Shown here in pieces: positions 2,381-57,648 of a stretch of 64,000 bases of DNA. Each line of letters begins with the position of its first letter. The first letter of the stretch is position 1. Location of the stretch: positions 124,001 to 188,000 of the IMG/VR virus record IMGVR_UViG_3300046694_000296. One strand, given 5' to 3'. The position numbers and the translations under genes were made by a program. The notes below the pieces were generated by a model. The model was not told where the DNA came from. It searched no databases and saw only the letters and a program-made list of their open reading frames with translations.

Positions 2381-2451
2381 TTAGTTTGCCTAGTAAGTAA
2401 CCCGTGACTTACAATCGAGGAGATAACAGTCTCTTCGACAAGGGTTCCTGC

Positions 2452-5400
2452 ATGGCTCAGCTCAAGCAAGTTTGCACCGTCACCAACGGCTCGCAGACGG
2501 TAACGGTGATTGGCGTGAATGTGGCTTACCGCATTCGCGCCAACAATATCTTCATGACGTCGCCGGACCTCGTGCCTTATACGGTCGCGAAGGATGCCGA
2601 GTTCGACGGCACGAACACCGTGGTCACGCTCGCGGCGAGCTATCAGGGCGACTCCGGCGCGATGGCGCAGGGCGTCTTCGTCACCGACTTCACCTACCCG
2701 GACAATATCCCGCTCATCAGCCAGGGCGACGTCGGCACGGCCGCGATCTGGACCAAGGCGATGTATCAGCTGCAGGAGATGATCGGCAGCGTGACGCCGG
2801 CGGGCCTGACTGCGTTCATCACCCAGATCAACGCCACGCAGAAGGCGGCAGCCGACGCGCGCGACGCAGCGTTAGCTTCCCAGACCGCCGCGAAGACGAG
2901 CGAGACGAACAGCAAGACCTCCGAGACGAACGCTGCGGCCAGCAAGACGGCGGCGAAGACCTCCGAGACGAATGCCAAGACCTCGGAAACGAATAGCAAG
3001 ACCAGCGAAACGAATAGCGCCGCGAGCGCGAAGGCGAGCGCCGATAGCGCGACCGCATCGGCCAACAGCGCGACCGCATCGGCGGGCTCAGCCACGGCCG
3101 CCGGCACCAGCGAGCGCAATGCCTCGGGCTCGGCCGCAGCAGCCTTGGCTTCGCAGGGCGCGGCGAAGACCAGCGAGACGAATAGCAAGACGAGCGAGAC
3201 GAATGCCTCGGGTTCGGCCGCGGCCGCGCTTGCTTCGCAGGGTGCAGCGAAGACCTCCGAGACGAACGCGAAAACTTCCGAGACAAACGCCAAGACCTCG
3301 GAAACAAATAGCAAGACCAGCGAAACCAACGCGAAGACGTCCGAGACGAATGCCGCGGCATCCGCCGGTGCGGCCGCTGCCGACCGCGCGACGGTGCAGG
3401 GCATCCTCAAGACGATGAACGCGCTGTATCTCGGCAAGAAGGCTTCGGACCCGACGACCGACAACAACGGCGATCCGCTGCAAGTCGGCGCGGAATACTG
3501 GAACGTCACCAAGGCGCTGATGCGCGTCTACACCGCCTCGGGCTGGCGTGATGAAGATGCGGACGCCCAGACGCAGGCCGCGAACGCGACGGCAAGCGCG
3601 TCGGCAGCGGCGGGCTCCGCCGCAGCGGCCTCGACCAGCGCCGCCAATGCCTCGACCAGCGAGCAGAACGCGAAGACGTCCGAGACGAATTCGAAGACCT
3701 CGGAAACGAACGCCAAGACCTCCGAGCAAGCCGCCGCCGCAAGCAAGCAGGCCGCCGCGACCTCAGAAGGCAATGCCAAGACCAGCGAGACGAACGCCAA
3801 GACCAGCGAGCAGAATGCCGCGGCCAGCGCCGCACATGCGGATCAGGTGGCGGCCACGATCGGCAACCCGGTGTCGAAGAACGGCGACACCATGACGGGC
3901 GACCTGTGGGTTGACGGAGCAAAGCTGCAAAGCACCCGCTACGGCACGGGCGGCGCGGTTGTCCTGCGCGGCACAAGTGGCACGCAGGCGTCGCCGACTG
4001 CGCTCGCGGCGGGAAGCCAGTCGGGCATCGTGGCATTCCGCGGCTATGACGGCGCGAATTATCAGGACATGGCCTCCATCGACGCATGGGCGGATGCTGA
4101 CGTCTCTAGCACCGCCTCTGCTGGGCAGCTTCGCTTTTCGACGACGCCAGCGGGTTCTGTCAACAAGACCGAGCGGATGCGCATCACGAGCACGGGACGG
4201 GTGCTCATCGGCACCGTGACCGATGACGGCTCGAACATGCTGCAGGTGGCGGGCAGCGTCGCCATCGGCGGCAACCAGACGTTCACGAACACGACGAACA
4301 GCACCATCGGCTCGATCTCGTCCAGCGCATACGCGGGCGGCCTGTCGATCGAAGCCTTCAACGTTGGCAACACGGCGAAGAAGAACCTGGCGCTCTCGCC
4401 GTGGGGCGGTCGCGTGCTCGTGGGAACGGCAACCGATGACGGCGCGACGCTGTTGCAGGTCAATGGCGCGGGCAAGTTCGCCGGCCAGCTCGTGACGGCG
4501 TATGCGAATCCGATCAACTACCTGAACGACACGAGCGGCAGCGGCGCGGCCGATCTTCGCTTCCAGTCGAACGCGGTGACGCGCTGGAGCATCCAGAAGA
4601 GCTCGGCGAACAACTTCAACCTCGCGCGCTTCGATTCGACCGGCGTGTTCGTCGACAATCCGCTGTCGTTCGCCACGGCAACGGGCATTGGCACGTTCAC
4701 GCAAGTGCCGGTTCATCCGACTGCAGCCGCCTACGACAATGGCACGAACAGCGCGACGACCGCCTTCGTCTATGCGAACGCGATGGGGCTGCGCGCGCCG
4801 CTCGGCGGCTCGGTGGATCTGAACACCATCACCACGTCCGGCGTCTATCACCAGCCGACCAACGCCAACGCGACGACGGCGCTGAACTACCCGACGACGA
4901 ACGCCGGCATGCTTGAGGTCTACACCTCCGGCAGCATGACGTATCAGACCTACACGCGTTATGACACCGGCGTGAAATACACGCGCTCCTATTACAACGG
5001 GACGTGGTATGCGTGGAAGCAGCTGGTGGACACGGCCAACGCATCGACGATCACCGGTGCGACGACGTTCTCCGGCACGACCTCGTTCTCTGGCGCTTCG
5101 ACCTTCACGGGCGGCGTGACCACGAACGCAGCAGCCATCGAAGGCGGCGCGGCCTACAGCACGCTCTACTTCCGCAACGGCGGCAAGGATCGCTGGCAGA
5201 TCTACAAGGACAACGTCGCTGAGTCCACCGGCAACGCTGGCGGCAACTTTGGCATCAACGCGGTCGCAGATAACGGCACGACGTCGTTCCAAGTCCTGAC
5301 GATCAACCGCGCGACCTACCAGATGCAGCTTAACGGCGGTCTGCAGAACAACGGCACCGGCCAGAAGGCGGGCCTGCTGATGCAGAACACGACCGCCTCG

Positions 5401-7936: not shown

Positions 7937-8481
7937 TCTACGTCCTGCTCACGCTGCTCAACCTCGTGTTCACGGGATTCGCCTACGTGCTGGCGCCGGT
8001 GGTCGCCCTCTTCTGCCGCGCCGACGGTTGGCTGCCCAAGTGGCTTGCGTGGTTCCAGACGTTTGACGCCTCGCTCGATGCGGGCTGGCGCGACGGCTAC
8101 TTCCCGGTGACAGGCACGCCGACCGGGCGAGCACGCTGGTGGCTGCGCACGAAGTGGCTATGGCGCAACCCGGCATACGGCTTTTGCTACTGGGCGATCG
8201 GCATCAACTTCGTGCCGGCCGACTGGGAGATCGTCAGCTTCGTGCGGCACGACGACGGCACATGCGACTTCCACGCGCGCACGAAGGACGGCCGCTACTT
8301 CAACCTGATGGCCGCGACGGGCACGAAGCTCGGCTGGAAGGCATGGAACTACTTCGACGGGCTCGATGAGGCCGGACAACCCAAGTGGAAGACATCGCCT
8401 TGGGGCCCGGCCTGGCGCACACCGATCTGCTTCACGCCGGGCAAGGGCTTCTTCGGCGCACTTTCGCGCCTGCGTGGATAA
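7933..8481 (+). CDS. Membrane-anchored phage protein
   Basis: N-terminal hydrophobic helix; WLWRNPAYGF motif; ATGA overlap. Confidence 0.65.
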   Translation: MIYVLLTLLNLVFTGFAYVLAPVVALFCRADGWLPKWLAWFQTFDASLDAGWRDGYFPVTGTPTGRARWWLRTKWLWRNPAYGFCYWAIGINFVPADWEIVSFVRHDDGTCDFHARTKDGRYFNLMAATGTKLGWKAWNYFDGLDEAGQPKWKTSPWGPAWRTPICFTPGKGFFGALSRLRG

Positions 8482-8556
8482 GTAACGACTGACTCACTAT
8501 AATGGGTGACGTGGCATCACAACACGTCACCCCTTTCACCTATCAAGGAGCATCAC

Positions 8557-8901: not shown

Positions 8902-8987
8902 CAGATAAGTAAGCGGTAGCTTTACAGGGGCGGGCCTCGGCTGTTAACATCGCCCCTGTTTACACCATTCCGCGAGAGAGCGACGGC

Positions 8988-11635: not shown

Positions 11636-11819
11636 TGGGAGGCGACGCCAGCTGAAGGAAGGGAGGCGGGTTTAACCCCGTCTCCCGCGCGTTTCTGAGG
11701 AACGAGGAATCACTTGGGGCTTGGAACGTGTTCCCTCTATATATAACCCTTCTTTAACTTCTTTCTATACTGTAACTAGAGACTTACTTTAAATATCAAT
11801 TAGTGAGGAACGCAGGACC

Positions 11820-12518
11820 GTGAACTTACCTCAATGCTTCGGCGACGCGCTCACCCCCGCTGACTGTGAAATGCTGGCCCTGACACGCGTCGATCCCTCG
11901 CTGCGGGCGGCCGAATCGCTGCTCTACAGCCGCAAGTGGTTCGATTTCAGGGCGCTCCACCCCGTGCAAGCCACGTATCGGTTCGCCCACGAATACGCGG
12001 AGAGCGTCAAGCGCGCATATGCCCGCCAGAAAGACATTCGCACGCTCGCGGGCGTGCAGGGTTTCGATGTCGAGAAGCTCTTCGAGAGCCGTGAACTCAG
12101 CGCGATGTGGCGGGCCCGACAGGCGTTCGACGCGATCGGCGTGCGCTATGACTTCGGCCTCGACTTCATCATGAAGCGATTCTGTGAACGCGGCTGGCGC
12201 GTCTTCCCGCGTCCGAACCAGCTGTATGCCGAAGAGGTGATCCTCGATGTGCGCGACGCGTGGCACCGGGAGTGCAAGGCCAAGACGCAACTCGCCCGGC
12301 ACGAGCGGTTCGATGCGCGCAACTACACCGGCCACCCCGACGAGAAAGCCTATCAGGCGTGGCAGGTCGATCAGGTCAAGGCCCGCGGCGGCAACCGCGC
12401 AATGCTGCTCGGACGGCTGCTGCAGGAGAACGTGCTCACCGAAGCGGTGGTGCACGCCGCCTTTGGCGAGGCAATGCTTGCCCAAGCGCGCAAATTCGTA
12501 GTTGCTGCCGATAAGTAA
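11820..12518 (+). CDS. Hypothetical protein upstream of the replication genes
   Basis: Long ORF with consistent codon usage and a preceding promoter-like region. Confidence 0.7.
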   Translation: MNLPQCFGDALTPADCEMLALTRVDPSLRAAESLLYSRKWFDFRALHPVQATYRFAHEYAESVKRAYARQKDIRTLAGVQGFDVEKLFESRELSAMWRARQAFDAIGVRYDFGLDFIMKRFCERGWRVFPRPNQLYAEEVILDVRDAWHRECKAKTQLARHERFDARNYTGHPDEKAYQAWQVDQVKARGGNRAMLLGRLLQENVLTEAVVHAAFGEAMLAQARKFVVAADK

Positions 12519-12532
12519 TTCGTTACTATACT
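12512..12532 (+). promoter_or_regulatory. Operator + -10 box (Hfq-like/dnaB operon)
   Basis: TAAGTAATTCGTTAC-TATACT. Confidence 0.75.
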
Positions 12533-14774: not shown

Positions 14775-15868
14775 ACGACGACCTCGGCGAGCTCCTCGAG
14801 CGCGTAGACATGGCTGCATACCTCGACCGCGAGGGCGTCTCCTATCGGGAGACGCACGGACGGTCGGGGGCACAGCTCAACATTCGGGAGTGCCCGCTGT
14901 GCGGCAATAGCGACTGGAAGGTCTACGTCAATGCCGAGTCGGGCGTCGGGAACTGCTTTGCAGGCTCGCACCCCGCAGAGGAGCGGTTCTTCACCAAATA
15001 CAAGTTCATCCGCGCACACCTCGGCTCGCCGGTCGGCGGCAAGGTGGTCGATCACATTCGTGTGTTCGCGCGTGAAATGGGCTGGCGGCCCGCGCGTCGC
15101 GTCTCAGCCAAGGTCGAGAACGCACCGGGCGCATGGGAGCTTCCCGCGCACGTCACGCTGCCGCACAACGGGCAGAACATGCCGTATCTGGAGAATCGCG
15201 GGATCGACGCGGAGCTCGCCGCATATTTTCACCTCGGCTACTGTCCGAACGGGGCGAGCTTCCGATTCTTGTCTGAGCGCGGCTGGGCCACGCAGGACTG
15301 GTCGCGTCGCATCCTGATCCCGGTCTACGACCTCGATGGCAAGATCGCGACCTTCCAAGGGCGCGACGTCACGGGTCGGGCCGAAAAGAAATACCTGTTC
15401 CCGCCGGGCATCGACGGCTCGGGCGTGCACCTCTTCAATGGGCTCAACGTCCGTGACACGAAGCGTATCGTGGTGGGTGAGGGCGCATTCGACGTGGCTG
15501 CGACCAAGATCGCGCTCGATGGCGACGCCGAGCTGCGCGACGTGGTGCCGGTGGGCACGTTCGGCAAACATCTGTCCTCGGGCAGCGAGAACAGCCAGCT
15601 CGCGAAGTTCCAGACGCTCAAGGAGCGCGGTGTCGAAGAGGTGACCTTCCTCTGGGACGGCGAAGTCCAGGCGACCGACGACGCGATCAAGGCGGGCCTG
15701 ATGCTCAAGTCAGTCGGCTTTCGCGTGCGCGTCGCGATGTTGCCGCCGGGCAAGGATCCAAACGAAGTGTCTGCTGACGTGGTGCGCGCCGCCTTCTATC
15801 AGGCGAAGCTGCTCGACCGGAAGTCGGCGCTGGAGATCATGACGCTTCGTCGCAAGCTGAACGGATAA
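14771..15868 (+). CDS. DNA primase (Zn-binding + TOPRIM)
   Basis: CPLC Zn finger, YLENRGI, FQGR, GEGAFD, WDGE and KDPNE motifs. Confidence 0.9.
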   Translation: MNDDLGELLERVDMAAYLDREGVSYRETHGRSGAQLNIRECPLCGNSDWKVYVNAESGVGNCFAGSHPAEERFFTKYKFIRAHLGSPVGGKVVDHIRVFAREMGWRPARRVSAKVENAPGAWELPAHVTLPHNGQNMPYLENRGIDAELAAYFHLGYCPNGASFRFLSERGWATQDWSRRILIPVYDLDGKIATFQGRDVTGRAEKKYLFPPGIDGSGVHLFNGLNVRDTKRIVVGEGAFDVAATKIALDGDAELRDVVPVGTFGKHLSSGSENSQLAKFQTLKERGVEEVTFLWDGEVQATDDAIKAGLMLKSVGFRVRVAMLPPGKDPNEVSADVVRAAFYQAKLLDRKSALEIMTLRRKLNG

Positions 15869-15886
15869 GTCACCCGTTACTATACT
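15866..15886 (+). promoter_or_regulatory. Operator + -10 box
   Basis: TAAGTCACCCGTTAC-TATACT. Confidence 0.75.
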
Positions 15887-17057: not shown

Positions 17058-17356
17058 CCAAGACCTACAAGCCGTTCAAGCTGCTGGAGACAGGCGAGAA
17101 GTTCATCGACCTCGACACCGGCGTGCTCTGCATGAAGATCGGCGGCATCGACAACCAAGGTAACGCGATGCACCTGTCGGCCGGCTACGACATCTTCCAT
17201 CGCACGAAGATCGGTGCAGTCGCACTGCAGCCGTTCAAGGCACACGGCCGCGATTATCCGGTCGGCGCGGTGCTCGCATTCGATGAAAAAGAAGCCGTTG
17301 AAATCCCGCCTTTCCTGGATTTCAAGGCGGTCGAACAACTTCAAACACAAGGGTAA
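17054..17356 (+). CDS. Hypothetical protein
   Basis: ATGA overlap, GGAG RBS. Confidence 0.7.
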   Translation: MTKTYKPFKLLETGEKFIDLDTGVLCMKIGGIDNQGNAMHLSAGYDIFHRTKIGAVALQPFKAHGRDYPVGAVLAFDEKEAVEIPPFLDFKAVEQLQTQG

Positions 17357-17363
17357 GTAACAC

Positions 17364-18773
17364 ATGACTTCCGCCGTAATGACCAGCTGCCAGGCGTTCA
17401 ACGTGATCGAGAAAATCGCCGCGACCTCCAGCAAGAACGACAAGCAGGCGATGGTGAAGCAGTTCCTCGCCTTCGACACCTTCAAGCGCGTGCTCGTCGC
17501 CGCACTCGACCCACTCGTGACCTACGGCATGCAGCAAGTGCCCGATCGCCTACCCAACACAGCACCGGGCGCCAACACCTTCGAGAACGCTGGAATCTGG
17601 GAGACGCTCGACCAGCTGCGGCTGCGCAATCTCACCGGCAACGCCGCGCGCGACGAAGTGCAGCGCTTGATGACCTTCCTCACGCCCGAGTCGGCCGAGC
17701 TCTTCAAGCGGATCTTGCGCAAGGATCTGCGCGCGGGCTTCTCCGAATCGACCGTCAACAAGGCATGGAAGGGGCTCATCCGCGAGTTCCCCTACATGCG
17801 CTGCGCGCTCCTGAAGGACGCGAAGCTCGACACGTGGACGTGGGAAGCGGGCGTGATCTCGCAGGAGAAGGCCGACGGCATGTTCATGAACATCGACCAC
17901 GAGGAGGGCGGGGTGGTGCGCATGACGAGCCGACAGGGCACGCCGTTTGATGTCGAGACGTTCGGCGTCTTCGCCGACCATGTGCGTGCGATGTTCCCTG
18001 CCGGCACGCAGACGCACGGCGAAATGCTCGTGGTGGTCAACGGCGAAATCGCCCCGCGCGAAATCAGCAACGGTATCCTGAACCGCGTGGCGGCGGGCGG
18101 CCAGTTCTCGCATGCCGAGACACCGCGGTTCTTCGCGTGGGATCAAATCCCGCTGGCCGTGGTCGCGCCGAAGGGCAAATACGAAGTCGGGTATCGCGAG
18201 CGTCTGAAGGCGATGGTCAAAGGCATGACGAACGGCCCGCGTGCACTCGGCATCCAGAGCGCGATGATTCAGGTCATTCCGACGAAGGTGGTCAAGTCGC
18301 TGGAAGAGGCGATGACTCACTATCGCGATCTGCTGGCCCAAGGCAAGGAAGGCACGATCATCAAGAACGGGGCCGCGACGTGGAAGGACGGCACGAGCAA
18401 GGAGCAGATCAAGCTCAAGCTCGAGGTGGACGTCGATTTGAAGGTGATCGCCATTGCGCCGGGCCGTGTGGGCACGAAGAACGAAGGCCGCGCTGGCGCT
18501 TTCACCTGCGAGACGTCCGAGGGCGGGCTGCGCGTCGATGTGACGGTGAAGAACGAGGCGCTACGCGATGAGGTCGATGCCAACCCCGAGAAGTTCATCG
18601 GTGGGATCATTGCAGTGCGCGCGAACGCGGTGATGAAGCCGAGCGAGAGCAACGACCGGCATAGCCTGTTTTTGCCGCGCATGGTCGAAGCAGGGCTTCG
18701 CCTCGACAAGAGCGAGCCGGATACGCTCACGCAAGTCATCGCGCAGTTCGACGCGGCAGTGAAGGGGGCATAA
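17364..18773 (+). CDS. lig: ATP-dependent DNA ligase
   Basis: EKADG adenylation motif, HGEM, EGTIIK, KLK and SLFLPR motifs. Confidence 0.92.
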   Translation: MTSAVMTSCQAFNVIEKIAATSSKNDKQAMVKQFLAFDTFKRVLVAALDPLVTYGMQQVPDRLPNTAPGANTFENAGIWETLDQLRLRNLTGNAARDEVQRLMTFLTPESAELFKRILRKDLRAGFSESTVNKAWKGLIREFPYMRCALLKDAKLDTWTWEAGVISQEKADGMFMNIDHEEGGVVRMTSRQGTPFDVETFGVFADHVRAMFPAGTQTHGEMLVVVNGEIAPREISNGILNRVAAGGQFSHAETPRFFAWDQIPLAVVAPKGKYEVGYRERLKAMVKGMTNGPRALGIQSAMIQVIPTKVVKSLEEAMTHYRDLLAQGKEGTIIKNGAATWKDGTSKEQIKLKLEVDVDLKVIAIAPGRVGTKNEGRAGAFTCETSEGGLRVDVTVKNEALRDEVDANPEKFIGGIIAVRANAVMKPSESNDRHSLFLPRMVEAGLRLDKSEPDTLTQVIAQFDAAVKGA

Positions 18774-18995: not shown

Positions 18996-19020
18996 CGCGC
19001 GCAGTGCGTTGCCTCACCGA

Positions 19021-19044
19021 GCCCGGCCAAAGCGCCGGGCTTTT
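19021..19044 (+). terminator. Rho-independent terminator
   Basis: GCCCGGC-loop-GCCGGGC-TTTT. Confidence 0.7.
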
Positions 19045-19857: not shown

Positions 19858-19858
19858 A

Positions 19859-20137
19859 TCAGGGGTATTGCTGGCGAGTATGCACGACGTTCACCACGTC
19901 GATGCGATCTGGCAGGGCCCGGAACACCAGAATGTAGTTTCGCGTGACGACGAGCTCCTGCGTGCCCGGCAGCCGACCCTCTTTGAATCTGACGCTCGCC
20001 TGTGCGACGTAGAGCGCCGCATCGTCGATCTGTTTTCGCAGGCTGACGGCGGCGCGGTAGTCGTATATAGAGACGTGGCGAACAATTGCTTTGACATCAG
20101 CCCGCGCTGCGCGGCTCCAGTGAACGGATCGAGTCAT
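19859..20137 (-). CDS. RelE/ParE family toxin
   Basis: VHWSRAARAD...GRLPGTQELVV..NYILVF....I.VVNVVHTRQQYP. Confidence 0.85.
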   Translation of the reverse strand: MTRSVHWSRAARADVKAIVRHVSIYDYRAAVSLRKQIDDAALYVAQASVRFKEGRLPGTQELVVTRNYILVFRALPDRIDVVNVVHTRQQYP

Positions 20138-20328
20138 CGGCTGTGACGTTTCTCCGCTTCACGAAGGATCTCGTCGAGCTCATCCATTACGACCGAGTGC
20201 GGGACCGTTTCGCCGCGCTCGATCTCATCTAGTCCTTCCTGCACCTTCTTGCGGAACCACGCATCGTAGGAGTCAGCTTCTTCCTGCGTGTCATGGTCGT
20301 AGATTAGGGGGTCGAGCTTGGTGGTCAT
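20134..20328 (-). CDS. Antitoxin (PaaA2/stability-determinant-like)
   Basis: Acidic 64 aa, SYDAWFRKKVQEGL..VPHSVVM; overlaps the toxin start. Confidence 0.82.
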   Translation of the reverse strand: MTTKLDPLIYDHDTQEEADSYDAWFRKKVQEGLDEIERGETVPHSVVMDELDEILREAEKRHSR

Positions 20329-20515
20329 AAAGCCTCCGAATTCATCCCTTCATCATAGCGCGCGCGCCCTTGGCGCGTCACCGCGCATAGCGATTGACAT
20401 AATAAGCATTAACACCCGTTTTAGCGCCAGAAAGCCTGACGCGATTTGATCTTCCCCGGAAACGGCGATTAAACGCTTCACTGCTAATACGGATTAGCAG
20501 ACAAGGGTTTCGCCG

Positions 20516-20767
20516 CTAGGTGTCGCTCATGATCTTGGCAAGGCCCGGGTAATAGACGTCGCAGCGCTCGCTCCAGGCGGGCGACGCGCGCCGTGGACAG
20601 TCTGCCAGCTCACCGGCAAGGTCGGTCATGGCGAAGTCGGCACCGAGGCGCGCGACGAGCTTTGCCAGCTGATAGCGCCCGCGCCGCTCGCACCGGGTGC
20701 AGGCGAGCTCGATGTGGCTCACGCGTGCGGCGACCTCACCGAGCGGGACAGCGCCGTCTCTTTTCAT
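20516..20767 (-). CDS. Hypothetical Cys-containing protein
   Basis: CxxC...C...C pattern. Confidence 0.6.
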   Translation of the reverse strand: MKRDGAVPLGEVAARVSHIELACTRCERRGRYQLAKLVARLGADFAMTDLAGELADCPRRASPAWSERCDVYYPGLAKIMSDT

Positions 20768-20776
20768 CGCCGCACC

Positions 20777-21007
20777 TCAGTAGTTGCTGTCCAGCCAGGC
20801 TCTTGCCCAAGAGATCGCGCGGTCGTTCGCCGCGGCCTCGGTGTCGTAATAGCCAATGTCGAAGAAGTGGAAAATTTCGCCCTCGTCTTCGTCTTCCCAC
20901 GGGCCGCGCTCGACCTCAACCCACGCGTGCCAGAGGAAGTTACGACACTCGGGAAACGACCGAATCGTCCACTCGCGATGTTCCACCTTCATTGACGGCT
21001 GTTTCAA
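20777..21007 (-). CDS. Hypothetical protein
   Basis: Co-directional with neighbours; plausible composition. Confidence 0.55.
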   Translation of the reverse strand: MKQPSMKVEHREWTIRSFPECRNFLWHAWVEVERGPWEDEDEGEIFHFFDIGYYDTEAAANDRAISWARAWLDSNY

Positions 21008-21024
21008 CGTTTCCCTCCACAGGC

Positions 21025-21047
21025 TTATCCACGGGTGCTGTGGATAA
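21025..21047. promoter_or_regulatory. Pair of inverted DnaA boxes
   Basis: TTATCCACG (21025) and TGTGGATAA (21039, perfect TTATCCACA on the minus strand). Confidence 0.7.
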
Positions 21048-21112
21048 GCAAGGTGCGTGCGTGACAGACCGGTAGTTGCATTTTGCCAATCCCGCGCGAA
21101 TAAACAGGGGCA

Positions 21113-22087
21113 CTAGAACGATTTGGTCACACGCGGCACGCTTGTCAGGCTCGGCGACAGGAGCAGTCCCGATTGCGTCGCCTCGACCCTAGCGTGCGGA
21201 TAGACCTCAAGCACCTGCCCGAGAGAGCGCTTGAGCACCTCGCGGAATTTGCGATGCCGCTCGGCCTCGCTGCCGAACTGCAGGCGCAACACCTCCCACG
21301 GCACGGTCGTCGGCCGACGCAGCGCGAACATGCGATAGGTCAGCCAGCAATACAGGTCGATCGACATAGGCGACTGCCGCAGCGCGCGCAAGGCCCGCAG
21401 ATCGACCGGCACCGGATGCTGCGTGACCTCATTGAAGAACCGGGATGAGAGCGTGACCGTGCTTTGCCATAGGCCCGCTTGATCGGGCCGCTGCTTTGAC
21501 CACCACAGGTTCATCTCGTCGGCGACCGTGAACTTGCCGCTGCCGAAGTCCTGCCCTGCTCCGCTCGTGATGATCGCCATGTCGGCCGCGAAAAGACGCT
21601 TCATCATCTCGCGCAGCCGCGTGATCGAGCCGTTCTTGCCACCGGAGTGCGAGGTGACGCCGATGGAGTTCATGAACTCGGAGAGCGTGTCGCCCAGCAC
21701 GATGCGAGGCTCCTTCGTGCGAACGGCCTCCGTCGACAACCACGCCAGCAGCAGGCGCGGGATCGTCCCATAGGGATAGCCCATGCTGCGCGCCTTGGTA
21801 GGATCGTGCGGGTGTTCGGGGTCCGCTTCGTAGCCCGGCTTGATGATGAGCATAGCCTCGCCCATCCCGCGGCCCCAGAACGGTAGTGCCCGGTCGGGCT
21901 CGCGATATGGCAGCGTCGCCTGCACCAACGCCCGGCCGAGAAAGCCAGCCATGCCAGCGGCGACCGCATCTTCCTGGTCAATCGCCTGAGCCTCTTCGAG
22001 CAGGCGCGCGGTGACGTTGCCATGCGGCACACCGCCCTTGCGCTTATTCTTCTCCCGCTCGACCAGATCACCCACGACGCCCTCCAC
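21113..22087 (-). CDS. repA: Plasmid replication initiator RepA (RepA_C family)
   Basis: LVQATLPY, GYPYGTIPRLLLAWL, PVPVDL and DLYCWL motifs; flanked by iterons; true start may be GTG 22075. Confidence 0.88.
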   Translation of the reverse strand: MEGVVGDLVEREKNKRKGGVPHGNVTARLLEEAQAIDQEDAVAAGMAGFLGRALVQATLPYREPDRALPFWGRGMGEAMLIIKPGYEADPEHPHDPTKARSMGYPYGTIPRLLLAWLSTEAVRTKEPRIVLGDTLSEFMNSIGVTSHSGGKNGSITRLREMMKRLFAADMAIITSGAGQDFGSGKFTVADEMNLWWSKQRPDQAGLWQSTVTLSSRFFNEVTQHPVPVDLRALRALRQSPMSIDLYCWLTYRMFALRRPTTVPWEVLRLQFGSEAERHRKFREVLKRSLGQVLEVYPHARVEATQSGLLLSPSLTSVPRVTKSF

Positions 22088-22125
22088 GAATTCGGCGCAT
22101 TAGACCGTAAACTTTGCGCCGCGTC

Positions 22126-22289
22126 GCGCATAGATGGGGGCGCTTGTAACAATCCACAAAGTCCTGTGGATTAGGGCGGTTATCAACAAATAAATGGGGG
22201 CGCGCCAGCGAATAGATGGGGGCGCTCGAACGAATAGCTGGGGGCGGCTGGCGAATAAATGGGGGCGCGTGACGAATAAACAGGGGCGT
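22126..22289 (+). repeat. Iteron array (six 18-bp repeats, consensus RCGAATARAYGGGGGCGC) with DnaA-box-like sites; probable oriV
   Basis: Copies at 22126, 22186, 22208, 22230, 22251, 22272 (21-22 bp periodicity); DnaA-like boxes 22151-22188; AT-rich tract follows. Confidence 0.88.
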
Positions 22290-22464
22290 TTTTGCTTCCA
22301 ACCCATTGAAACGAAAAGCGAAAACATCGCCTCTAGTATTGCTTTTAGTGTTTACGTTTACTCATAGTTGCTAGTAGAGCAGCCCGCTTCTGTGGACAAC
22401 TGCGTTGCCCACCATACGCGAGCCGCCCACGAGCGACGGAGAGATATTGCCGAGTCAAAACCGA

Positions 22465-22508
22465 CCGCCCCTATTTATTCGCTACGGGGTGCGCCCCCGT
22501 TTATTCGT
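22465..22508 (-). repeat. Two inverted iterons
   Basis: Reverse-complement copies of the iteron consensus at 22465-22482 and 22491-22508. Confidence 0.8.
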
Positions 22509-22883
22509 TCAGTCCATCCCGAGGCGCTTCTTCTCACGTGCGACCGCAACGCGCAGCGCTTCGGCGATGAAGTCGTTCTTGGTCTGCCCAGTGGCAAAGC
22601 AGATCAGGTTCAAATCCTCTTTGAGCGCGGGCGGGATACGCACTGGCTGCTGCACGGGTGCCTCTTTTTTCGGGCGCATCGCGCGCAGGGCTGACAGGTC
22701 AAGCTTGGTGCCGTGCGCCCTACTCTCCTCGGCGGCCGGCGCTGGCGCCTGTGCTTCTGGCGGCGCGATCGGTCGCACATTGTCAGCGGGCGGTGCCGTG
22801 GTCACCGCAGCCACCTCGCTCTTCAGTGCGCCCAGAATGGCGCTACGGCCCTTCGGCGCGCTCATCACGTCGTCTTTGCTCAT
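22509..22883 (-). CDS. Partition partner protein (ParG/RHH-like centromere binding)
   Basis: Overlaps the parA stop; flexible N-terminus and C-terminal PVRIPPALKEDL..KNDFIAEAL ribbon-helix-helix pattern. Confidence 0.7.
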   Translation of the reverse strand: MSKDDVMSAPKGRSAILGALKSEVAAVTTAPPADNVRPIAPPEAQAPAPAAEESRAHGTKLDLSALRAMRPKKEAPVQQPVRIPPALKEDLNLICFATGQTKNDFIAEALRVAVAREKKRLGMD

Positions 22884-23551
22884 GATCCGAATGCTCCCAG
22901 ATAGGTGTCTTTCATCTCGTTCGCGGCAGCGGCATCCCACCACTCGCCGGTCAGCTCGGTGACGCCCTTGCCTTGCGCCAAGGCGAACTTGTAGCTCTCG
23001 CGCGAGGCGATCAGATGCTTCATGAGGGGTAGCCGATCCTTGAACGCCTCCATCTGCTTGAGCATGGATTTGGTCATGCGCTTGCGCTTGTCGGCCTGAT
23101 TGAGCACGACCCGCACGTCAATCTTCTTGGTGTATGTGCCGAGAAGCTCGTGGAGATCAGGCACGGTGTCGAGATCCGCCGGCGACGGGATGAGCGGCGC
23201 GATGACCTTCTCTGCCACTGCCAGCCCGTAGCGAAACCCGTCCGAGTCCTTGCCGCCGACGTCGATGAACACGTCGTCATACTCGTCGACCAGGCGGCCA
23301 AGAATGTCAGCGAACTCCTCTTCCGTCAGGCGCTTCTCTCGCGGCCAACGCTCAACGTGGACCTGGGACAACTCGGGATGCTCCGCGCGGCGCAAGGCCC
23401 ACTTTGTCGTGGTGCCCTGCCCGTCCAGATCGAATACCGCGACACGTCGGTCGAGAGATGCGCGGATAACGACCAAGTTTTGCGTAATGGTTGATTTGCC
23501 GACACCACCCTTCTCTGTTCCCACCATAAATACGTCCTTGATTACGGACAT
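22880..23551 (-). CDS. parA: ParA family partition ATPase (type Ib)
   Basis: KGGVGKST deviant Walker A, DLDGQ and IDVGG motifs. Confidence 0.92.
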   Translation of the reverse strand: MSVIKDVFMVGTEKGGVGKSTITQNLVVIRASLDRRVAVFDLDGQGTTTKWALRRAEHPELSQVHVERWPREKRLTEEEFADILGRLVDEYDDVFIDVGGKDSDGFRYGLAVAEKVIAPLIPSPADLDTVPDLHELLGTYTKKIDVRVVLNQADKRKRMTKSMLKQMEAFKDRLPLMKHLIASRESYKFALAQGKGVTELTGEWWDAAAANEMKDTYLGAFGS

Positions 23552-23847: not shown

Positions 23848-24303
23848 TTACACCTTGTCAGTGCGCTTGCCATATTCCTTCAACACACCGCGGATAGCTG
23901 TGTTGAACTTCGGGTCGTCAAAGTCGAGGTCGGCGGTGCCGGCTTCTTCCAATGCTAGGCGCTCGAACTCTCGTTGCGTGCGGGTGACGAAACGGTCGCC
24001 CAGGATCTCTTCGATCACCTTCCATGCATCCGGCATGTATTCGGTCATCACCATGCGCAAGAGGTTCGCCGGGTCCAGACCTAGCACGATTGCCATTGCG
24101 CGGACCTTGTTGACCGGCAGCTTCGTCTTGCCTTGCCGGAAGAGGGTGACGATGTTTCGGTTGCTGTAGCCGAGCGCCTCGCAGATTTCTGTCTGCGTCT
24201 TGCCGCTCAGGTCGATCACTTGACCGAGGTATTCGGCCACGCTCAGTTGCTTGGCAGGGTGTCGCTTTGCTTTCACTTCCGGTGCTGCTGCCTTTGCATT
24301 CAT
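23848..24303 (-). CDS. XRE-family HTH regulator, probable prophage repressor
   Basis: KTQTEICEALGY..NIVTLFRQGKTKLP HTH; divergent from the early operon with several operators between them. Confidence 0.8.
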   Translation of the reverse strand: MNAKAAAPEVKAKRHPAKQLSVAEYLGQVIDLSGKTQTEICEALGYSNRNIVTLFRQGKTKLPVNKVRAMAIVLGLDPANLLRMVMTEYMPDAWKVIEEILGDRFVTRTQREFERLALEEAGTADLDFDDPKFNTAIRGVLKEYGKRTDKV

Positions 24304-24322: not shown

Positions 24323-24510
24323 TTAGTAAACAGTAACTCACATATTTGGCGGGAAGATTGGTAACCGCTAACTTCCCTCGATGCATTCGATTATAGACGT
24401 AAAAATTGCATGCCAAACAGAGATCGAAGCCGAGCGTGGTGGCGATATGCGCTGGCGAAGACGTATCGCGTGCGGTTGCGCACACTACAATATAAGTCAC
24501 AGCTTACGTA
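24323..24510. promoter_or_regulatory. Divergent promoter region with three operator copies
   Basis: Operator cores at 24326, 24361 and 24496; TACAAT at 24486. Confidence 0.65.
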
Positions 24511-24550: not shown

Positions 24551-24790
24551 ATGCTGCAGAACATGACCATCGTGCCCGTCAGCCAAGATCAGGCGATCGT
24601 TATTCTGGCCGAGACGACCGAGACGGGAAGCACGCTGGACGGGGGTTCTGTGCAGACGACCGTCTGCCGACACCCGCTGATTGGCGAGTTGGTCCTCATT
24701 CAGAACGCGATCGACGCCTCCGCCGTGGTGCTCGATCGCGCGCAGGTTCCCGCGCTAAGTGATTGGTTACATCCAAGCGCTGCTCATTGA
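24551..24790 (+). CDS. Hypothetical protein (first early gene)
   Basis: Strong RBS GAGGAG/AGGA; ATG start. Confidence 0.65.
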   Translation: MLQNMTIVPVSQDQAIVILAETTETGSTLDGGSVQTTVCRHPLIGELVLIQNAIDASAVVLDRAQVPALSDWLHPSAAH

Positions 24791-28551: not shown

Positions 28552-28576
28552 CCTAGTAAGTAACGGATTACCAATC

Positions 28577-33205: not shown

Positions 33206-33248
33206 GCCTCACTATACTCGGTAGCGTCTAGTAAGTAACAGGTGACAT

Positions 33249-34448: not shown

Positions 34449-34469
34449 TGAGTCACCCGTTACTATACT
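34449..34469 (+). promoter_or_regulatory. Operator + -10 box (ssb)
   Basis: TGAGTCACCCGTTAC-TATACT. Confidence 0.75.
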
Positions 34470-38753: not shown

Positions 38754-39196
38754 TGGCTGAGCTGAAGGTCAAGGAGTGGAAACCGTCACCCTGCGGCAAG
38801 TATCAGTCGGCGCAGGTCAAGAAGGGCCACAACCTCTACGGCGAGATCCGCAAATACACGAACGGCATGAGCATCTACTGGGCCTTCAGGAAGCCCGACG
38901 AGGTGTTCGTGGAGCTTGACGCCTGGGCGATCGACACCGAGACGATCTCCGTGATGAAGAGCCGGCGCGTCACCCACATCGGCATCCTCGTCTCGAACGG
39001 CGACCAATACCTGACGCGCATCGAGACGATGACCGACAAGGACAAAGGTGCGGTCGTCCTCAACTACACCACCCATCGCGGCGCACGCGGCAAGTTCGGC
39101 GCCCGGCAGTGGTATCTGCCGCGCAGCCAGTTCGTGCAGCAACTCGCGCCGCCCGAGTCCACCATCGAGCAGATGAAGATCAAAGGACGAAGATAA
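38753..39196 (+). CDS. Hypothetical protein
   Basis: TGATG coupling; good codon usage. Confidence 0.7.
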   Translation: MAELKVKEWKPSPCGKYQSAQVKKGHNLYGEIRKYTNGMSIYWAFRKPDEVFVELDAWAIDTETISVMKSRRVTHIGILVSNGDQYLTRIETMTDKDKGAVVLNYTTHRGARGKFGARQWYLPRSQFVQQLAPPESTIEQMKIKGRR

Positions 39197-39252
39197 GTAA
39201 GCCGTTACGTGTTTGCTACAATCGGTCATTCTGAAATGAGGGAACCAACACG

Positions 39253-39660
39253 ATGATTCTAGCCACAGCGCTTTTATGCCTGACCATGAATGTTTACTTC
39301 GAGGCCCGCGACCAACCGATTGCCGGGCAATACGCAGTCGCCGCCGTCACCATGAACCGCGCGGCCGACGATCCGAAACAGGTCTGCGATGTGGTGATGC
39401 AGCCGCATCAATTCAGCTGGACCGATAAGCTCCTCCAGCGCGACGAAGTGGGCTGGAAGCTGCGCAAGGCCGGCGTGCCCAAGGACGACTTCGCATGGGC
39501 TATGGCAAGCCGAGTCGCCTTCAACACGCTCAATGGCCACAAGATCGACGCCACGCACGGCGCGACCTACTATCACACGAAGGAAGTGCGCCCCGCGTGG
39601 CGCAAGCAATTCATCCACGCAGTGACGATCGGCGACCACGTTTTTTATCGCGTAACGTAA
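39253..39660 (+). CDS. Cell wall hydrolase (SleB/Hydrolase_2)
   Basis: CL..NVYFEAR....GQ.AVA.V.MNR...QFSW...GATYYH...IGDHVFY. Confidence 0.9.
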   Translation: MILATALLCLTMNVYFEARDQPIAGQYAVAAVTMNRAADDPKQVCDVVMQPHQFSWTDKLLQRDEVGWKLRKAGVPKDDFAWAMASRVAFNTLNGHKIDATHGATYYHTKEVRPAWRKQFIHAVTIGDHVFYRVT

Positions 39661-39678
39661 GCAACGCGTTACTATACT
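39658..39678 (+). promoter_or_regulatory. Operator + -10 box
   Basis: TAAGCAACGCGTTAC-TATACT. Confidence 0.7.
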
Positions 39679-43920: not shown

Positions 43921-43932
43921 AAGGAAAGGAAC

Positions 43933-44499: not shown

Positions 44500-44632
44500 G
44501 CGCGCAAGCGCTCTGCCTACCTATACTGAAAAGGGAAGAGGTCGCAAGGGCGACTTATTTTTTGGCTTTGCTGTAGAGTAACCGCTGACTTACAATCTCT
44601 TCCCCCTCTCCGAACGAACCCGAGAAACACTG

Positions 44633-48210: not shown

Positions 48211-48231
48211 TAAGTCACGCGTTACTATACT
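48211..48231 (+). promoter_or_regulatory. Operator + -10 box
   Basis: TAAGTCACGCGTTAC-TATACT. Confidence 0.75.
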
Positions 48232-49713: not shown

Positions 49714-49753
49714 GTAACGGGTTGCCTCACTATACTGATAAGTAACCCGTTAC
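49714..49753 (+). promoter_or_regulatory. -10 box flanked by two operators
   Basis: GTAACGGGTTGC, TATACT (49731), TAAGTAACCCGTTAC. Confidence 0.75.
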
Positions 49754-49791
49754 ACACGGTTAAAACGAAACCTCTACAGGAGCAACACCTC

Positions 49792-52530: not shown

Positions 52531-52551
52531 GCTCCAATCGCTCACGCTTAC

Positions 52552-52574
52552 TATACTGGTAAGTAACACGTTAC
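52552..52574 (+). promoter_or_regulatory. -10 box + operator
   Basis: TATACT-GG-TAAGTAACACGTTAC. Confidence 0.75.
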
Positions 52575-52597
52575 CAACCAACTATTACAGAGGGAAC

Positions 52598-55147: not shown

Positions 55148-55281
55148 TGCTGCCTCATAGCAGTTGAAAGCAGCGATGCTAGCGAGTTCCTGCGTCGAAC
55201 ACAAACTCCAAAATGTATACGCAGCGGGCCGACCAGCGCTCACTATACTGAGTAACAGGTAACTTATTTATTGAGGTGTGT

Positions 55282-57354: not shown

Positions 57355-57532
57355 GATCCTGCTGTTCAACCTGCTGGTCCCCGCAATTGCTCACCCGAAG
57401 GTGGCGCATTTACGGCTGCTCTCGACGCTTGCGCTCCTCATCAAGCTGCCCGTCTTAGGTATGCTGGGTCGGGTGACCTCGGAAGACGTGAGCATTGAGG
57501 AATTAACCAAGCGTCTGAAATCGGTCCAATGA
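57254..57532 (+). CDS. Small membrane protein
   Basis: AAGGAG RBS; two hydrophobic segments; overlaps the RNase H tail. Confidence 0.5.
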   Translation: MWAPAFHQYRFGKNKSWLNSLWLGTIWAFLTLPEILLFNLLVPAIAHPKVAHLRLLSTLALLIKLPVLGMLGRVTSEDVSIEELTKRLKSVQ

Positions 57533-57648
57533 CCAGTCTGTAGAGTCTGAATTTGCAATTGGTTGCACAGGGAAAGCGCAGAGGCGCTTTTATTTTCCCT
57601 GTGTGTGTAAGTAATGCCTTACTCATACTATACTGAGTGGAGAGGCTA

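What the first reader, a model, noticed from the sequence alone, without database searches (positions are those of the whole stretch)
2394..57634. Genome-wide palindromic operator TAAGTAAC-NN-GTTACTTA at about 25 sites overlapping -10 boxes
Seen: 12-bp cores (GTAAC-NN-GTTAC and variants) start at 2397, 8482, 8909, 11772, 12515, 15869, 17357, 24326, 24361, 24496, 24759, 27243, 27270, 28560, 33235, 34452, 39197, 39661, 44578, 48214, 49714, 49742, 52563, 55252 and 57611. Almost all are intergenic, and many lie immediately before or after TATACT/TACAAT/TATAAT. The variable position relative to -10 argues for a repressor operator rather than a promoter element. It is not the betaproteobacterial LexA box (CTGT-N8-ACAG). 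Inference: a dispersed single-repressor regulon like the P1 C1 system, probably read by the XRE protein at 23848-24303, which has three sites in its own divergent promoter and no visible autocleavage domain. It covers replication genes and also tail-fibre and lysis-region genes.
Basis: partly seen in the sequence, partly recalled or inferred. Interest (0 to 1): 0.68.

Follow-up and report, generated by a model that had tools for sequence, protein, structure and literature searches.

The report
Dispersed repressor operators in a phage-plasmid
An 18-bp palindrome repeated about 38 times per genome sits on the promoters of the lytic genes of a rhizosphere SSU5-like phage-plasmid and is most likely the operator of its own XRE-type lysogeny repressor, a layout shared by the Salmonella, E. 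coli, Klebsiella and Rhizobium relatives I checked and not found described in the papers I could search.

Summary
The 12-bp core with one mismatch occurs 14 times against 0.34 expected. An 18-bp symmetric matrix (TAAGTAAC-NN-GTTACTTA) finds 75 sites in the 215-kb record against 0.65 in shuffles. Sites are mostly intergenic and are conserved between two 80%-identical genome copies.

They lie in two fixed registers relative to a strand-specific -10-like word (ACTATACT): filling the spacer up to the -10, or covering +1.

The element is an SSU5/pHCM2-type phage-plasmid. Relatives with a homolog of the XRE protein (win 23848-24303) have 27-41 sites in the same 18-bp frame: Cyrano, Klebsiella pJN2-26 and Rhizobium RHph_N1_10. 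Two lytic relatives without the protein have none.

SSU5 has sites but no XRE. It lacks a roughly 7-kb block, holding integrase, regulator and a small ORF, that a neighbouring-sequence 99%-identical plasmid carries at that spot.

The Cyrano homolog is expressed in lysogens.

Best reading: dispersed operators of the XRE lysogeny repressor (0.68), working like P1 C1, L5 gp71 or phiC31 c without homology to any of them being shown. No binding or transcript data exist. It is a new member of a known kind.

The parts
2394..2411 (.). Operator site, 28.8 bits; TACAAT starts at +16; just upstream of the tail-fibre gene (to 6888)
8479..8496 (.). Operator site, 22.5 bits; TATAAT at +19; its TAA is the stop codon of the upstream gene; precedes ORF 8506-8901
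8906..8923 (.). Operator site, 18.8 bits; no strong hexamer; followed by a GC hairpin; precedes the holin homolog 8988-9320
   Evidence: hit to Cyrano holin CYRAN_22
11769..11786 (.). Weak site, 7.4 bits, directly after a TATACT; same register in copy A; probably low affinity
12512..12529 (.). Operator site, 24.3 bits; class I (TATACT at +15); precedes ORF 12582 and DnaB helicase 13034-14422
15866..15883 (.). Operator site, 25.1 bits; class I (TATACT at +15); precedes ORF 15918-16409
17354..17371 (.). Operator site, 20.5 bits; overlaps the start codon of DNA ligase (17364-18773)
23848..24303 (-). XRE-type helix-turn-helix protein, 151 aa; candidate repressor; no protease domain; own terminator hairpin at about 23783-23810
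24323..24340 (.). Weak operator, 17.2 bits, in the XRE 5'-UTR about 20 bp before the start codon; same place in L009 and copy A
24358..24375 (.). Weak operator, 13.6 bits, just downstream of the leftward XRE promoter (-10 TATAAT on the minus strand, 24395-24390)
24493..24510 (.). Operator, 19.0 bits, covering +1 of the rightward promoter (TACAAT 24486-24491) of the small ORF and CobT operon
24551..24790 (+). Small 79-aa ORF, first gene of the rightward operon; syntenic in all relatives; function unknown (a Cro-like role is only a guess)
24756..24773 (.). Doubtful site, 13.8 bits, inside the 3' end of the 79-aa ORF; the copy A ortholog scores only 8.4 bits
27240..27284 (.). Double operator (18.1 and 21.7 bits, 27 bp apart) between the CobT-like and CobS-like genes; the double site is kept in copy A, L009, L013 and the Rhizobium phage; Cyrano has one site there
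28557..28574 (.). Operator, 21.6 bits, ending 2 bp before the start codon (28577) of the sigma-like gene (to 29215)
33211..33249 (+). ACTATACT plus operator (23.0 bits, 33232-33249) in front of an HNH endonuclease gene; the whole cassette is absent from copy A
34449..34466 (.). Operator, 22.3 bits; class I (TATACT at +15); precedes the SSB gene 34569-35576
39194..39211 (.). Operator, 18.7 bits; TACAAT at +23; precedes the cell-wall hydrolase 39253-39660
39658..39675 (.). Operator, 22.2 bits; class I (TATACT at +15); precedes ORF 39732-40277 and SbcCD
44575..44592 (.). Operator, 21.5 bits; TACAAT at +16; lies after a terminator (44539-44556) and before the RNR large subunit 44633
48211..48228 (.). 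Operator, 25.4 bits; class I (TATACT at +15); precedes ORF 48276-48704
49729..49756 (+). ACTATACT (49729-49736) then operator (49739-49756, 24.1 bits); class II, covering +1; precedes the MazG-like gene 49792
52550..52577 (+). ACTATACT then operator (52560-52577, 22.4 bits); class II
55242..55266 (+). ACTATACT overlapping the operator (55249-55266, 24.4 bits); class II; precedes the exonuclease gene 55276
57608..57634 (+). Operator (57608-57625, 23.9 bits) then ACTATACT (57627-57634); precedes ORF 57637-57876
19859..23551 (-). Leftward plasmid-maintenance block (RepA_C 21113-22087, ParA 22880-23551, small ORFs); no operator lies between 17371 and 24323

Best explanation
The 18-bp palindrome TAAGTAAC-NN-GTTACTTA is the operator of a phage-encoded dimeric repressor, most likely the 151-aa XRE-type protein at window 23848-24303. 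The element is an SSU5/pHCM2-type phage-plasmid of about 108 kb with about 38 operators. In the plasmid-prophage state the repressor would occupy them and shut the rightward (lytic) transcription units: replication and nucleotide metabolism, the sigma-like gene, lysis, tail fibre and structural genes. It would do this by sitting either on the spacer and -10 (class I) or on the start site (class II) of each promoter. The leftward Rep/Par block carries no operator. The repressor gene has only two weak sites in its 5'-UTR, which suggests autoregulation, while a stronger site covers the divergent rightward promoter. Operators without a visible promoter may act as roadblocks or as extra binding points. 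Shown here: the motif, its enrichment, its conservation, its registers, and its co-occurrence with the XRE gene. Inferred: binding, repression and the identity of the binder. The protein has no protease domain, so induction is likely not by self-cleavage; how it is induced is unknown.
For: Enrichment: 75 sites against 0.65 expected, 65 of them intergenic. Purifying selection: 33 of 38 copy-B sites have a positional ortholog in the 80%-identical copy A. Informative positions are 91% identical against 79-81% in the flanks, and changes fall at the degenerate positions. The arms vary independently, with Watson-Crick counts at or below chance, so this is a DNA dimer site. Registers: hexamer at +15/+16 (14 sites) or -8 to -5 (12 sites). 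The same peaks appear in SSU5, Cyrano, pJN2-26 and the Rhizobium phage. In several SSU5 and Cyrano sites the palindrome fills a 17-bp spacer between a TTGAAA-type -35 and a TATCAT-type -10; such promoters need no activator. All 18 plus-strand ACTATACT words lie within 30 bp of a site. Phyletic pattern: 27-41 sites in the same 18-bp frame in Cyrano, pJN2-26 and RHph_N1_10, which have the XRE homolog, and only noise in nickie and BUCTxx99, which lack it even by profile HMM at E up to 10. Of all copy-B ORFs only XRE, ParA and the holin fit that pattern. SSU5 (sites, no XRE) lacks a block of about 7 kb with integrase, regulator and small ORF that is present in plasmid pMB2617_2, which is 99% identical in the adjoining sequence. 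Sites lie in the XRE control region in all lineages. In a MAG prophage the 48%-identical homolog lies beside an integrase, and sites occur only in the prophage part. The Cyrano homolog CYRAN_45 is expressed 10-fold above background in the lysogen (PMC9928086). The fold of residues about 20-90 resembles 434 Cro, C.AhdI, SinR and DdrO.
Against: There is no binding, footprint or transcript-start evidence for this or any related element. No RNA runs hold this DNA. The homodimer prediction gave no verdict. The Pfam HTH_31 score (18.8) is below the gathering cut-off of 27. The phyletic test rests on only two motif-negative genomes, and these also lack ParA and the rest of the lysogeny block. About half of the sites have no recognisable -10 nearby. 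The -10-like hexamers in this phage lack a consensus -35, so they are not proven promoters. Part of the +16 peak is built into the palindrome's terminal TA. Keeping the outer half-site (TAAGT) at only 31-40% repressor identity is unusual for immunity repressors.
Confidence: 0.68

Rival explanations
1. The palindrome is a repressor operator, but it is read by another phage protein that my searches could not single out, for example a small fast-evolving DNA-binding protein. In that case the XRE protein controls only its own switch region.
For: SSU5 keeps 30 well-formed sites without any XRE gene. The profile test sees only proteins detectable by tblastn at 1e-3. The outer half-site is conserved across lineages whose XRE proteins share only 31-40% identity.
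Against: No other DNA-binding ORF fits the phyletic pattern. ParA here is a 223-aa Walker ATPase for which Pfam matched only nucleotide-binding families, and the third ORF is the holin. The SSU5 case is explained by a deletion relative to a plasmid 99% identical in the adjoining sequence. Sites of the same matrix lie in the XRE control region in all lineages.
Confidence: 0.13
2. The palindrome is a positive promoter element. It would be the binding site of an activator, or part of a composite promoter read together with the ACTATACT word by the phage sigma-like protein (28577-29215). This would resemble P1 late promoters, which as I recall have an inverted repeat near -22 plus a -10 and no -35.
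For: Class I sites lie directly upstream of a -10-like word that lacks a consensus -35. ACTATACT is always paired with a palindrome. A sigma-like gene is present.
Against: Twelve sites, and the same register in every lineage, lie downstream of the hexamer over +1, where activators rarely work. Several SSU5 and Cyrano promoters have near-consensus -35 and -10 around the palindrome, and no sigma-like gene is annotated between CobS and Pol III there. The sigma-like protein has no detectable homolog in the motif-positive genomes and a weak one in motif-negative BUCTxx99. A monomeric sigma would not need a palindrome.
Confidence: 0.12
3. A host-encoded regulator reads the sites, so that the phage has borrowed a host factor, as some phages do with LexA or CtrA.
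For: Such borrowing is known in other phages (PMC9437464). The host genome could not be searched.
Against: The same 18-bp frame occurs in phages of Enterobacteriaceae, Rhizobium and a rhizosphere host, with lineage-specific inner positions. It is absent from syntenic lytic relatives. There were 0 sites in the 8.3 kb of host DNA next to the L013 prophage against 5 in the 11.7-kb prophage part. It is not a LexA box (CTGT-N8-ACAG) or a CtrA box (TTAA-N7-TTAA) by sequence.
Confidence: 0.04
4. The repeat has a non-transcriptional role: a partition or packaging site, a replication signal, an RNA hairpin or processing site, or a mobile miniature repeat.
For: Several sites lie between a stop codon and a GC hairpin with no -10 in sight. 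The left arm is better kept than the right on the plus strand.
Against: There is no pairing covariation. The two precise registers relative to a -10-like hexamer, and the placement within about 45-65 bp of start codons, point to transcription. The flanks are not repeated, so it is not a mobile element. The arm asymmetry is explained by overlap with the -10 on the right and by use of TAA as the stop codon on the left.
Confidence: 0.03

Closest known systems
Phage P1 C1 repressor and its dispersed operators (from my own knowledge, not checked here)
   Same: A phage-plasmid of about 100 kb in which one repressor controls many operators spread over the genome and overlapping promoters. The repressor has no self-cleaving protease domain.
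   Different: P1 operators are asymmetric 17-bp sites, whereas these are 18-bp palindromes. The protein here is an XRE/Cro-type HTH, and no C1 family appeared among its PHROG or Pfam matches. No Coi, Lxc or c4/ant equivalents were looked for.
Mycobacteriophage L5/Bxb1 gp71 repressor with 'stoperators' (from my own knowledge)
   Same: Some 24-34 sites per genome, mostly in short intergenic gaps of the lytic operons. Some of those sites are not at promoters and act as transcription roadblocks; the promoter-less sites here could do the same.
   Different: Stoperators are asymmetric 13-bp sites that act in one orientation. Here the sites are palindromic, and about half sit in fixed registers on a -10-like hexamer.
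Streptomyces phage phiC31 repressor c and its conserved inverted repeats (from my own knowledge)
   Same: An inverted-repeat operator of about 17 bp found at many intergenic places across the early region of a temperate phage.
   Different: A different protein family and a different host phylum. Sites here also lie before late genes (tail fibre, lysis, structural).
Lambda/434/P22-type CI-Cro switch
   Same: A divergent repressor promoter and lytic promoter with three palindromic sites of graded strength. The strongest site is on the lytic promoter and the weaker ones on the repressor gene side. The HTH fold resembles 434 Cro.
   Different: There are about 35 further operators outside the switch. 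There is no S24 protease domain. The small first gene of the lytic operon has no detectable HTH.
SSU5/pHCM2-type phage-plasmids (Cyrano, pJN2-26, SSU5, RHEph10-like Rhizobium phages)
   Same: Same gene order: tail fibre, lysis, helicase-primase-ligase, lysogeny/plasmid block, XRE, small ORF, CobT, CobS, Pol III alpha, SSB, SbcCD. The same 18-bp operator frame occurs with 27-41 sites.
   Different: Protein identity is only 25-60%. The inner operator positions differ: AAC here, AAGT in the enteric members, CAAT in Rhizobium. This element has RepA_C + ParA instead of an integrase, and -10-only ACTATACT promoters.

Membership tests
XRE/Cro-C1-type helix-turn-helix repressors | Five-helix HTH DNA-binding domain | tested here: met
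   The model has pLDDT about 85 over residues 20-100. It aligns to 434 Cro, C.AhdI, SinR, DdrO and ImmR with target TM 0.7-0.8 and rmsd about 2 A. PHROG 2967 and PHROG 8 'transcriptional regulator' match at E 2.5e-7 and 4.6e-6.
XRE/Cro-C1-type helix-turn-helix repressors | Significant match to a curated Pfam HTH family | tested here: inconclusive
   HTH_31 scores 18.8 bits, E 0.0021, below the gathering score of 27.
XRE/Cro-C1-type helix-turn-helix repressors | Binds a palindromic operator as a homodimer | not testable with these tools
   The palindrome with independent arms fits a dimer. The homodimer prediction returned no verdict.
LexA/lambda CI-type self-cleaving repressors | C-terminal S24 peptidase domain | tested here: not met
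   No Peptidase_S24 hit in Pfam. The C-terminal part is predicted helical, at low confidence.
P1 C1 immunity system | C1-family repressor protein | tested here: not met
   The PHROG and Pfam scans return XRE-type regulator families only.
P1 C1 immunity system | Asymmetric 17-bp operators | tested here: not met
   The sites are 18-bp palindromes.
P1 C1 immunity system | Many operators dispersed over a plasmid-prophage genome and overlapping promoters | tested here: met
   About 38 sites per roughly 108-kb genome; two registers on -10-like hexamers.
L5-type stoperators | Asymmetric sites with one orientation relative to transcription | tested here: not met
   The core is symmetric. The only asymmetry is in the flanks, where the site merges with the -10 or a stop codon.
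P1 Lpa-type late promoters | Inverted repeat at a single fixed place upstream of a -10, with no -35 | tested here: not met
   Class I sites fit loosely (centre near -18.5). A second class of 12 sites lies downstream of the hexamer. Several enteric relatives' promoters have good -35 boxes.
SSU5/pHCM2-type phage-plasmids | Conserved phage core with CobT/CobS-like pair, Pol III alpha, DnaB, ligase, SbcCD and RNR in SSU5 gene order, plus plasmid Rep/Par | tested here: met
   Pfam and PHROG annotation. tblastn hits to SSU5, Cyrano and pJN2-26 for about 30 ORFs at 25-60% identity, in the same order. This makes it a distant member, not a close one.

The most novel reading that the evidence does not exclude
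The whole SSU5/pHCM2 supergroup, including phage-plasmids of Salmonella, E. coli, Klebsiella and Enterobacter, would share one master switch. An XRE repressor would read 30-40 operators in a conserved 18-bp frame placed in two fixed registers on nearly every lytic promoter. Lineage-specific inner bases would define immunity groups. Lytic isolates such as SSU5 would be repressor-deletion derivatives that still carry the operators and so stay sensitive to resident relatives. In this rhizosphere member the operators would also gate a -10-only promoter class (ACTATACT) that may be read by the phage's own sigma-like protein, giving a two-layer lock.
Probability: 0.35. Interest if true: 0.7.

Novelty: new member of a known kind. 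Interest (0 to 1): 0.58.

Why it matters
Phage-plasmids of the SSU5/pHCM2 type are common in Enterobacteriaceae. One 2.5-kb SSU5 segment alone matched 822 plasmid records. They are discussed as carriers of resistance genes, yet I found no described operator or immunity mechanism for them in the searchable papers. A defined operator and repressor would allow several things:
- predicting which elements exclude each other;
- explaining why SSU5 behaves as a lytic phage;
- finding the promoters of the lytic programme;
- building simple induction or curing tools.

For this rhizosphere element it gives a nearly complete map of likely transcription units from sequence alone.

Tried and rejected
- **RNA hairpin or processing site:** rejected, because there is no pairing covariation.
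rejected as the main idea. It has no homolog in motif-positive relatives and a weak one in a motif-negative phage.
- **ParA and the 110-aa ORF as readers:** rejected. Pfam matched only nucleotide-binding families in the 223-aa ParA, and the 110-aa ORF is the holin.
- **XRE homodimer prediction:** no verdict (score 0.20, mark 0.32). It is not used as evidence either way.
- **Exact-palindrome scan:** it recovered the motif in our record but was too strict for the relatives.
- **Near-palindrome detector:** it failed its positive control and was dropped. Dyad analysis replaced both.
- **Two-hexamer sigma-70 scan:** not enriched (4 found, 3.5 expected), and it does not call the TATACT words.
- **Host contig behind L013 and the contig behind L009:** could not be searched.
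- **Sequencing runs:** only rhizosphere DNA runs hold the stretch, with no RNA, so no reads were laid.
- **PDB search by sequence profile:** nothing useful.
- **Literature:** no paper holds the motif strings, and no SSU5-group operator was found described.
- **Megablast of 20 kb of the window against phages:** one short Pol III match only.
Full report

Yes. The 12-bp core GTAAC-NN-GTTAC occurs twice exactly (0.00 expected). With one mismatch it occurs 14 times against 0.34 expected, and no shuffle gave more than 2.

A symmetric position matrix trained on these sites and iterated on the full record converges on 75 non-overlapping sites, against 0.65 in shuffles. The scores are bimodal: 76 positions score at least 12 bits and only about 20 score 6-12 bits.

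- Site 11772 is weak (7.4 bits). It keeps the same place after a TATACT in both genome copies, so it may be a low-affinity site.
- Site 49714 (3.1 bits) has only the core and is degenerate in the other copy. I do not count it.

65 of 75 sites are intergenic by a crude gene map in which about 80% of the record is gene interior.

**2. What the window is part of**

The window is bases 124001-188000 of a 215,656-bp virus record. A self-comparison shows two collinear copies at about 80% identity: A is 1-108902 and B is 108903-215656.

The first 156 bp of the record recur exactly at 108903. This is the longest exact segment shared by A and B. The terminal repeat is exactly 127 bp. The record is therefore best read as two related circular genomes of about 107-109 kb merged by the assembler through a shared repeat. 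The window lies wholly in copy B. Each genome has 37-40 sites, depending on the matrix.

The DNA occurs in rhizosphere metagenomes, and no RNA run holds it.

Gene content in the window:
- tail fibre, a holin homolog and PhoH;
- DnaB, DNA ligase, SSB, SbcCD, both RNR subunits, a MazG-like protein and an exonuclease;
- a CobT-like/CobS-like pair, a weak sigma-70 region 2 match, and Pol III alpha;
- a leftward block with RepA_C, ParA and a 151-aa XRE-type protein.

tblastn places the element in the wide SSU5/pHCM2 group. That group includes the E. coli phage-plasmid Cyrano, Klebsiella pJN2-26, Salmonella phage SSU5, RHEph10-like Rhizobium phages, and the lytic Pseudomonas phage nickie and Stenotrophomonas phage BUCTxx99. 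Gene order is the same throughout.

**3. Anatomy of the sites**

*DNA site, not RNA hairpin.* Mirrored positions pair no more often than independent arms would. For positions 6/13 the count is 26 against 33.8 expected. This is a DNA site for a dimer.

*Arm asymmetry.* On the plus strand the left arm (TAAG) is better kept than the right (CTTA). The right arm often merges with a -10-like hexamer, and the left TAA often serves as the stop codon of the upstream gene.

*Two registers.* Relative to strong hexamers (TATACT, TACAAT, TATAAT, TATAGT) the sites fall in two classes:
- Class I, 14 sites: the hexamer starts at +15/+16 from the site start, so the site spans about -27 to -10.
- Class II, 12 sites: the hexamer starts at -8 to -5, so the site spans about -4 to +14.

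It takes two positions, and both are classical repressor positions.

*The ACTATACT word.* It occurs 18 times on the plus strand, once on the minus strand, and 0.2 times per strand in shuffles. All 18 plus-strand copies lie within 30 bp of a palindrome. No shared -35 is visible, and the two-hexamer sigma-70 scan is not enriched (4 found, 3.5 expected). These are therefore -10-only candidates, not proven promoters.

*Sites without a hexamer.* About half of the sites have no strong hexamer. Several lie between a stop codon and a GC hairpin.

**4. Selection**

33 of 38 copy-B sites have a high-scoring site at the orthologous place in copy A. Informative positions are 91% identical against 79-81% in the 60-bp flanks. 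Changes pile up at the degenerate positions 6, 9, 10 and 13.

**5. Who reads it?**

*The switch region.* The XRE gene (23848-24303, minus strand) is transcribed away from a small 79-aa ORF and the CobT operon.
- The rightward -10 (TACAAT, 24486-24491) is followed at once by the strongest local site (24493-24510).
- The leftward -10 (TATAAT on the minus strand, 24395-24390) has two weaker sites downstream, in the XRE 5'-UTR.
- The XRE gene has its own terminator.

The same three sites lie at the same places in copy A and in a 76%-identical relative, L009. Every other lineage has at least one site in the XRE control region.

*The protein.* Residues about 20-90 fold like 434 Cro, C.AhdI, SinR and DdrO. 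There is no S24 protease domain.

*A prophage relative.* In a MAG prophage (L013) a 48%-identical homolog sits in the same XRE, small ORF, CobT module, but beside an integrase. Sites of a slightly shifted consensus occur only in the prophage part: 5 in 11.7 kb against 0 in 8.3 kb of host DNA.

**6. Family-wide test**

Dyad analysis, checked first on our own record, and then per-genome matrices gave these counts:

| Genome | Sites | Shuffle mean | XRE homolog |
|---|---|---|---|
| Copy A / copy B (this record) | 40 / 38 | 0.6 / 0.4 | yes |
| SSU5 | 30 | 0.7 | no |
| Klebsiella pJN2-26 | 32 | 0.9 | yes |
| Cyrano | 27 | 1.1 | yes |
| Rhizobium RHph_N1_10 | 41 | 0.2 | yes |
| nickie | low-information noise | - | no |
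| BUCTxx99 | low-information noise | - | no |

All the positive genomes use the same 18-bp frame and differ in the inner positions. The consensus reads TAAGTAAGT|ACTTACTTA in SSU5, TAGGTAA.T|A.TTACCTA in Cyrano, and TAAATCAAT|ATTGATTTA in the Rhizobium phage. T1, A2, T5 and A7 are shared by all.

A profile HMM of the XRE family finds one strong full-length hit in each phage-plasmid. It finds nothing at E up to 10 in nickie, BUCTxx99 or SSU5.

Among all copy-B ORFs, only three are confined to motif-positive genomes: XRE, ParA and the holin. The sigma-like protein does not fit that pattern.

*The SSU5 exception.* SSU5 has sites but no XRE. Enterobacter plasmid pMB2617_2, 99% identical in the adjoining sequence, carries an extra block of about 7 kb that ends with an integrase, a 128-aa regulator and the small ORF directly before CobT. 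The regulator is 66% identical to Cyrano's and 40% to ours. SSU5 has only a tRNA at that place. SSU5 thus looks like a repressor-deletion derivative. It also shows that lytic growth does not need the XRE protein, which argues against an activator role for that protein.

*Promoter context in the enteric genomes.* In several SSU5 and Cyrano sites the palindrome fills the 17-bp spacer of promoters with a good -35 (TTGAAA) and -10 (TATCAT or TATGAT). The same hexamer registers (+16, +19, -5, -8) recur in all lineages. The +16 peak is partly built into the terminal TA of the palindrome.

*Expression.* In LF82 the Cyrano homolog CYRAN_45, annotated 'putative repressor', is among the few phage-plasmid genes expressed in the lysogen, at 10 times background. 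Cyrano is induced by genotoxic stress (PMC9928086).

**7. Mechanism proposed**

A dimer of the XRE protein occupies about 38 operators in the plasmid-prophage. It blocks RNA polymerase at the spacer/-10 (class I) or at the start site (class II) of the rightward transcription units. The leftward Rep/Par block is free of operators: the longest multi-gene site-free stretch in the window is 17371-24323. Two weak sites would temper the repressor's own synthesis.

Rightward co-directional gaps carry a site in 37 of 80 cases, leftward ones in 2 of 13. This count rests on my crude gene map.

Sites without a promoter may be roadblocks. Binding, repression and the induction route are all inferred. I put 0.68 on this reading.

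**8. Rivals**

- The same operator read by a different, unidentified phage protein: 0.13.
- A positive promoter element for an activator or the sigma-like protein: 0.12. Class II sites, the enteric -35 boxes and the sigma profile argue against it.
- A host factor: 0.04.
- Non-transcriptional roles: 0.03.

**9. Comparison with known systems**

It works like the dispersed-operator immunity systems of P1 (C1), mycobacteriophages L5 and Bxb1 (gp71 stoperators) and phiC31 (conserved inverted repeats). These comparisons are from my own knowledge and were not checked here. It is not shown to be a member of any of them: the sites are palindromic, and the protein is an XRE/Cro-type HTH with no C1 family among its matches. 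The local switch resembles a lambda/434 CI-Cro region but lacks the protease domain.

I found no description of this operator or of an SSU5-group immunity mechanism in the searchable papers. Subscription papers are not covered, so prior description cannot be excluded.

**10. Verdict**

It is a new member of a known kind. Added value comes from the family-wide reach and from the simple, testable predictions.

Noticed in passing
whole record G000:C1 (window = 124001-188000): The 215,656-bp 'complete' virus record is two collinear genomes of about 107-109 kb at about 80% identity, joined head to tail. The junction (108903) is the longest exact shared segment (156 bp), and the terminal repeat is exactly 127 bp. 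It is probably an assembly merge of two related circular phage-plasmids and not one jumbo genome.
   Followed up: yes
window 12525-57634 (10 copies), record-wide 18 copies: ACTATACT is a strand-specific -10-like word: 18 on the plus strand, 1 on the minus strand, 0.2 expected. It has no shared -35 and is always paired with a palindrome. It may be read by the phage's sigma-like protein (28577-29215) and not by host sigma-70.
   Followed up: partly
window 33193-33746: The HNH/NUMOD4 endonuclease gene after Pol III alpha is an insertion absent from copy A. It brings its own ACTATACT and operator (33211-33249) in its 5' flank.
   Followed up: partly
window 44521-44563 and about 37913-37919: Two CTATACT words have no palindrome, and both are conserved in copy A. 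The one at 44521 is followed within about 12 nt by a terminator hairpin (44539-44556) and a T run, which would give a very short transcript or an attenuator ahead of the RNR operator and promoter.
   Followed up: partly
window 27286-27299 and 39680-39693: An identical 14-mer (TCACCTGTAGCGAA) lies just downstream of two class I promoters. It is also present in copy A and, inverted, in L009. It could be a leader element or a second protein site.
   Followed up: partly
window about 23645-23690: Direct repeats of CTTGATACCAA-like units lie upstream of parA. They are a candidate par operator or centromere.
   Followed up: no
L057 (SSU5 39000-46600) vs L058/L059 (pMB2617_2 NZ_CP103753.1 41500-53500): Salmonella phage SSU5 lacks a block of about 7 kb that is present in an Enterobacter plasmid 99% identical in the adjoining sequence. 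The block holds PhoH, glutaredoxin, a YafO toxin, an integrase, the 128-aa regulator and a small ORF. SSU5 looks like a repressor-deletion derivative of a phage-plasmid.
   Followed up: yes
L013 (GCA_030155485.1 contig JALYFC010000024.1, 53683-74123): A relative of this family is integrated in a Pseudomonadota MAG. The XRE, small ORF, CobT module lies beside a tyrosine integrase instead of Rep/Par, so the family switches between plasmid and integrated lifestyles.
   Followed up: partly
copy A 4613, 91097; copy B 113553, 200922; window 8906-8923: Several operators lie between a stop codon and a GC-rich hairpin with no -10 nearby. They may be roadblock sites, or operators paired with terminators.
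   Followed up: no
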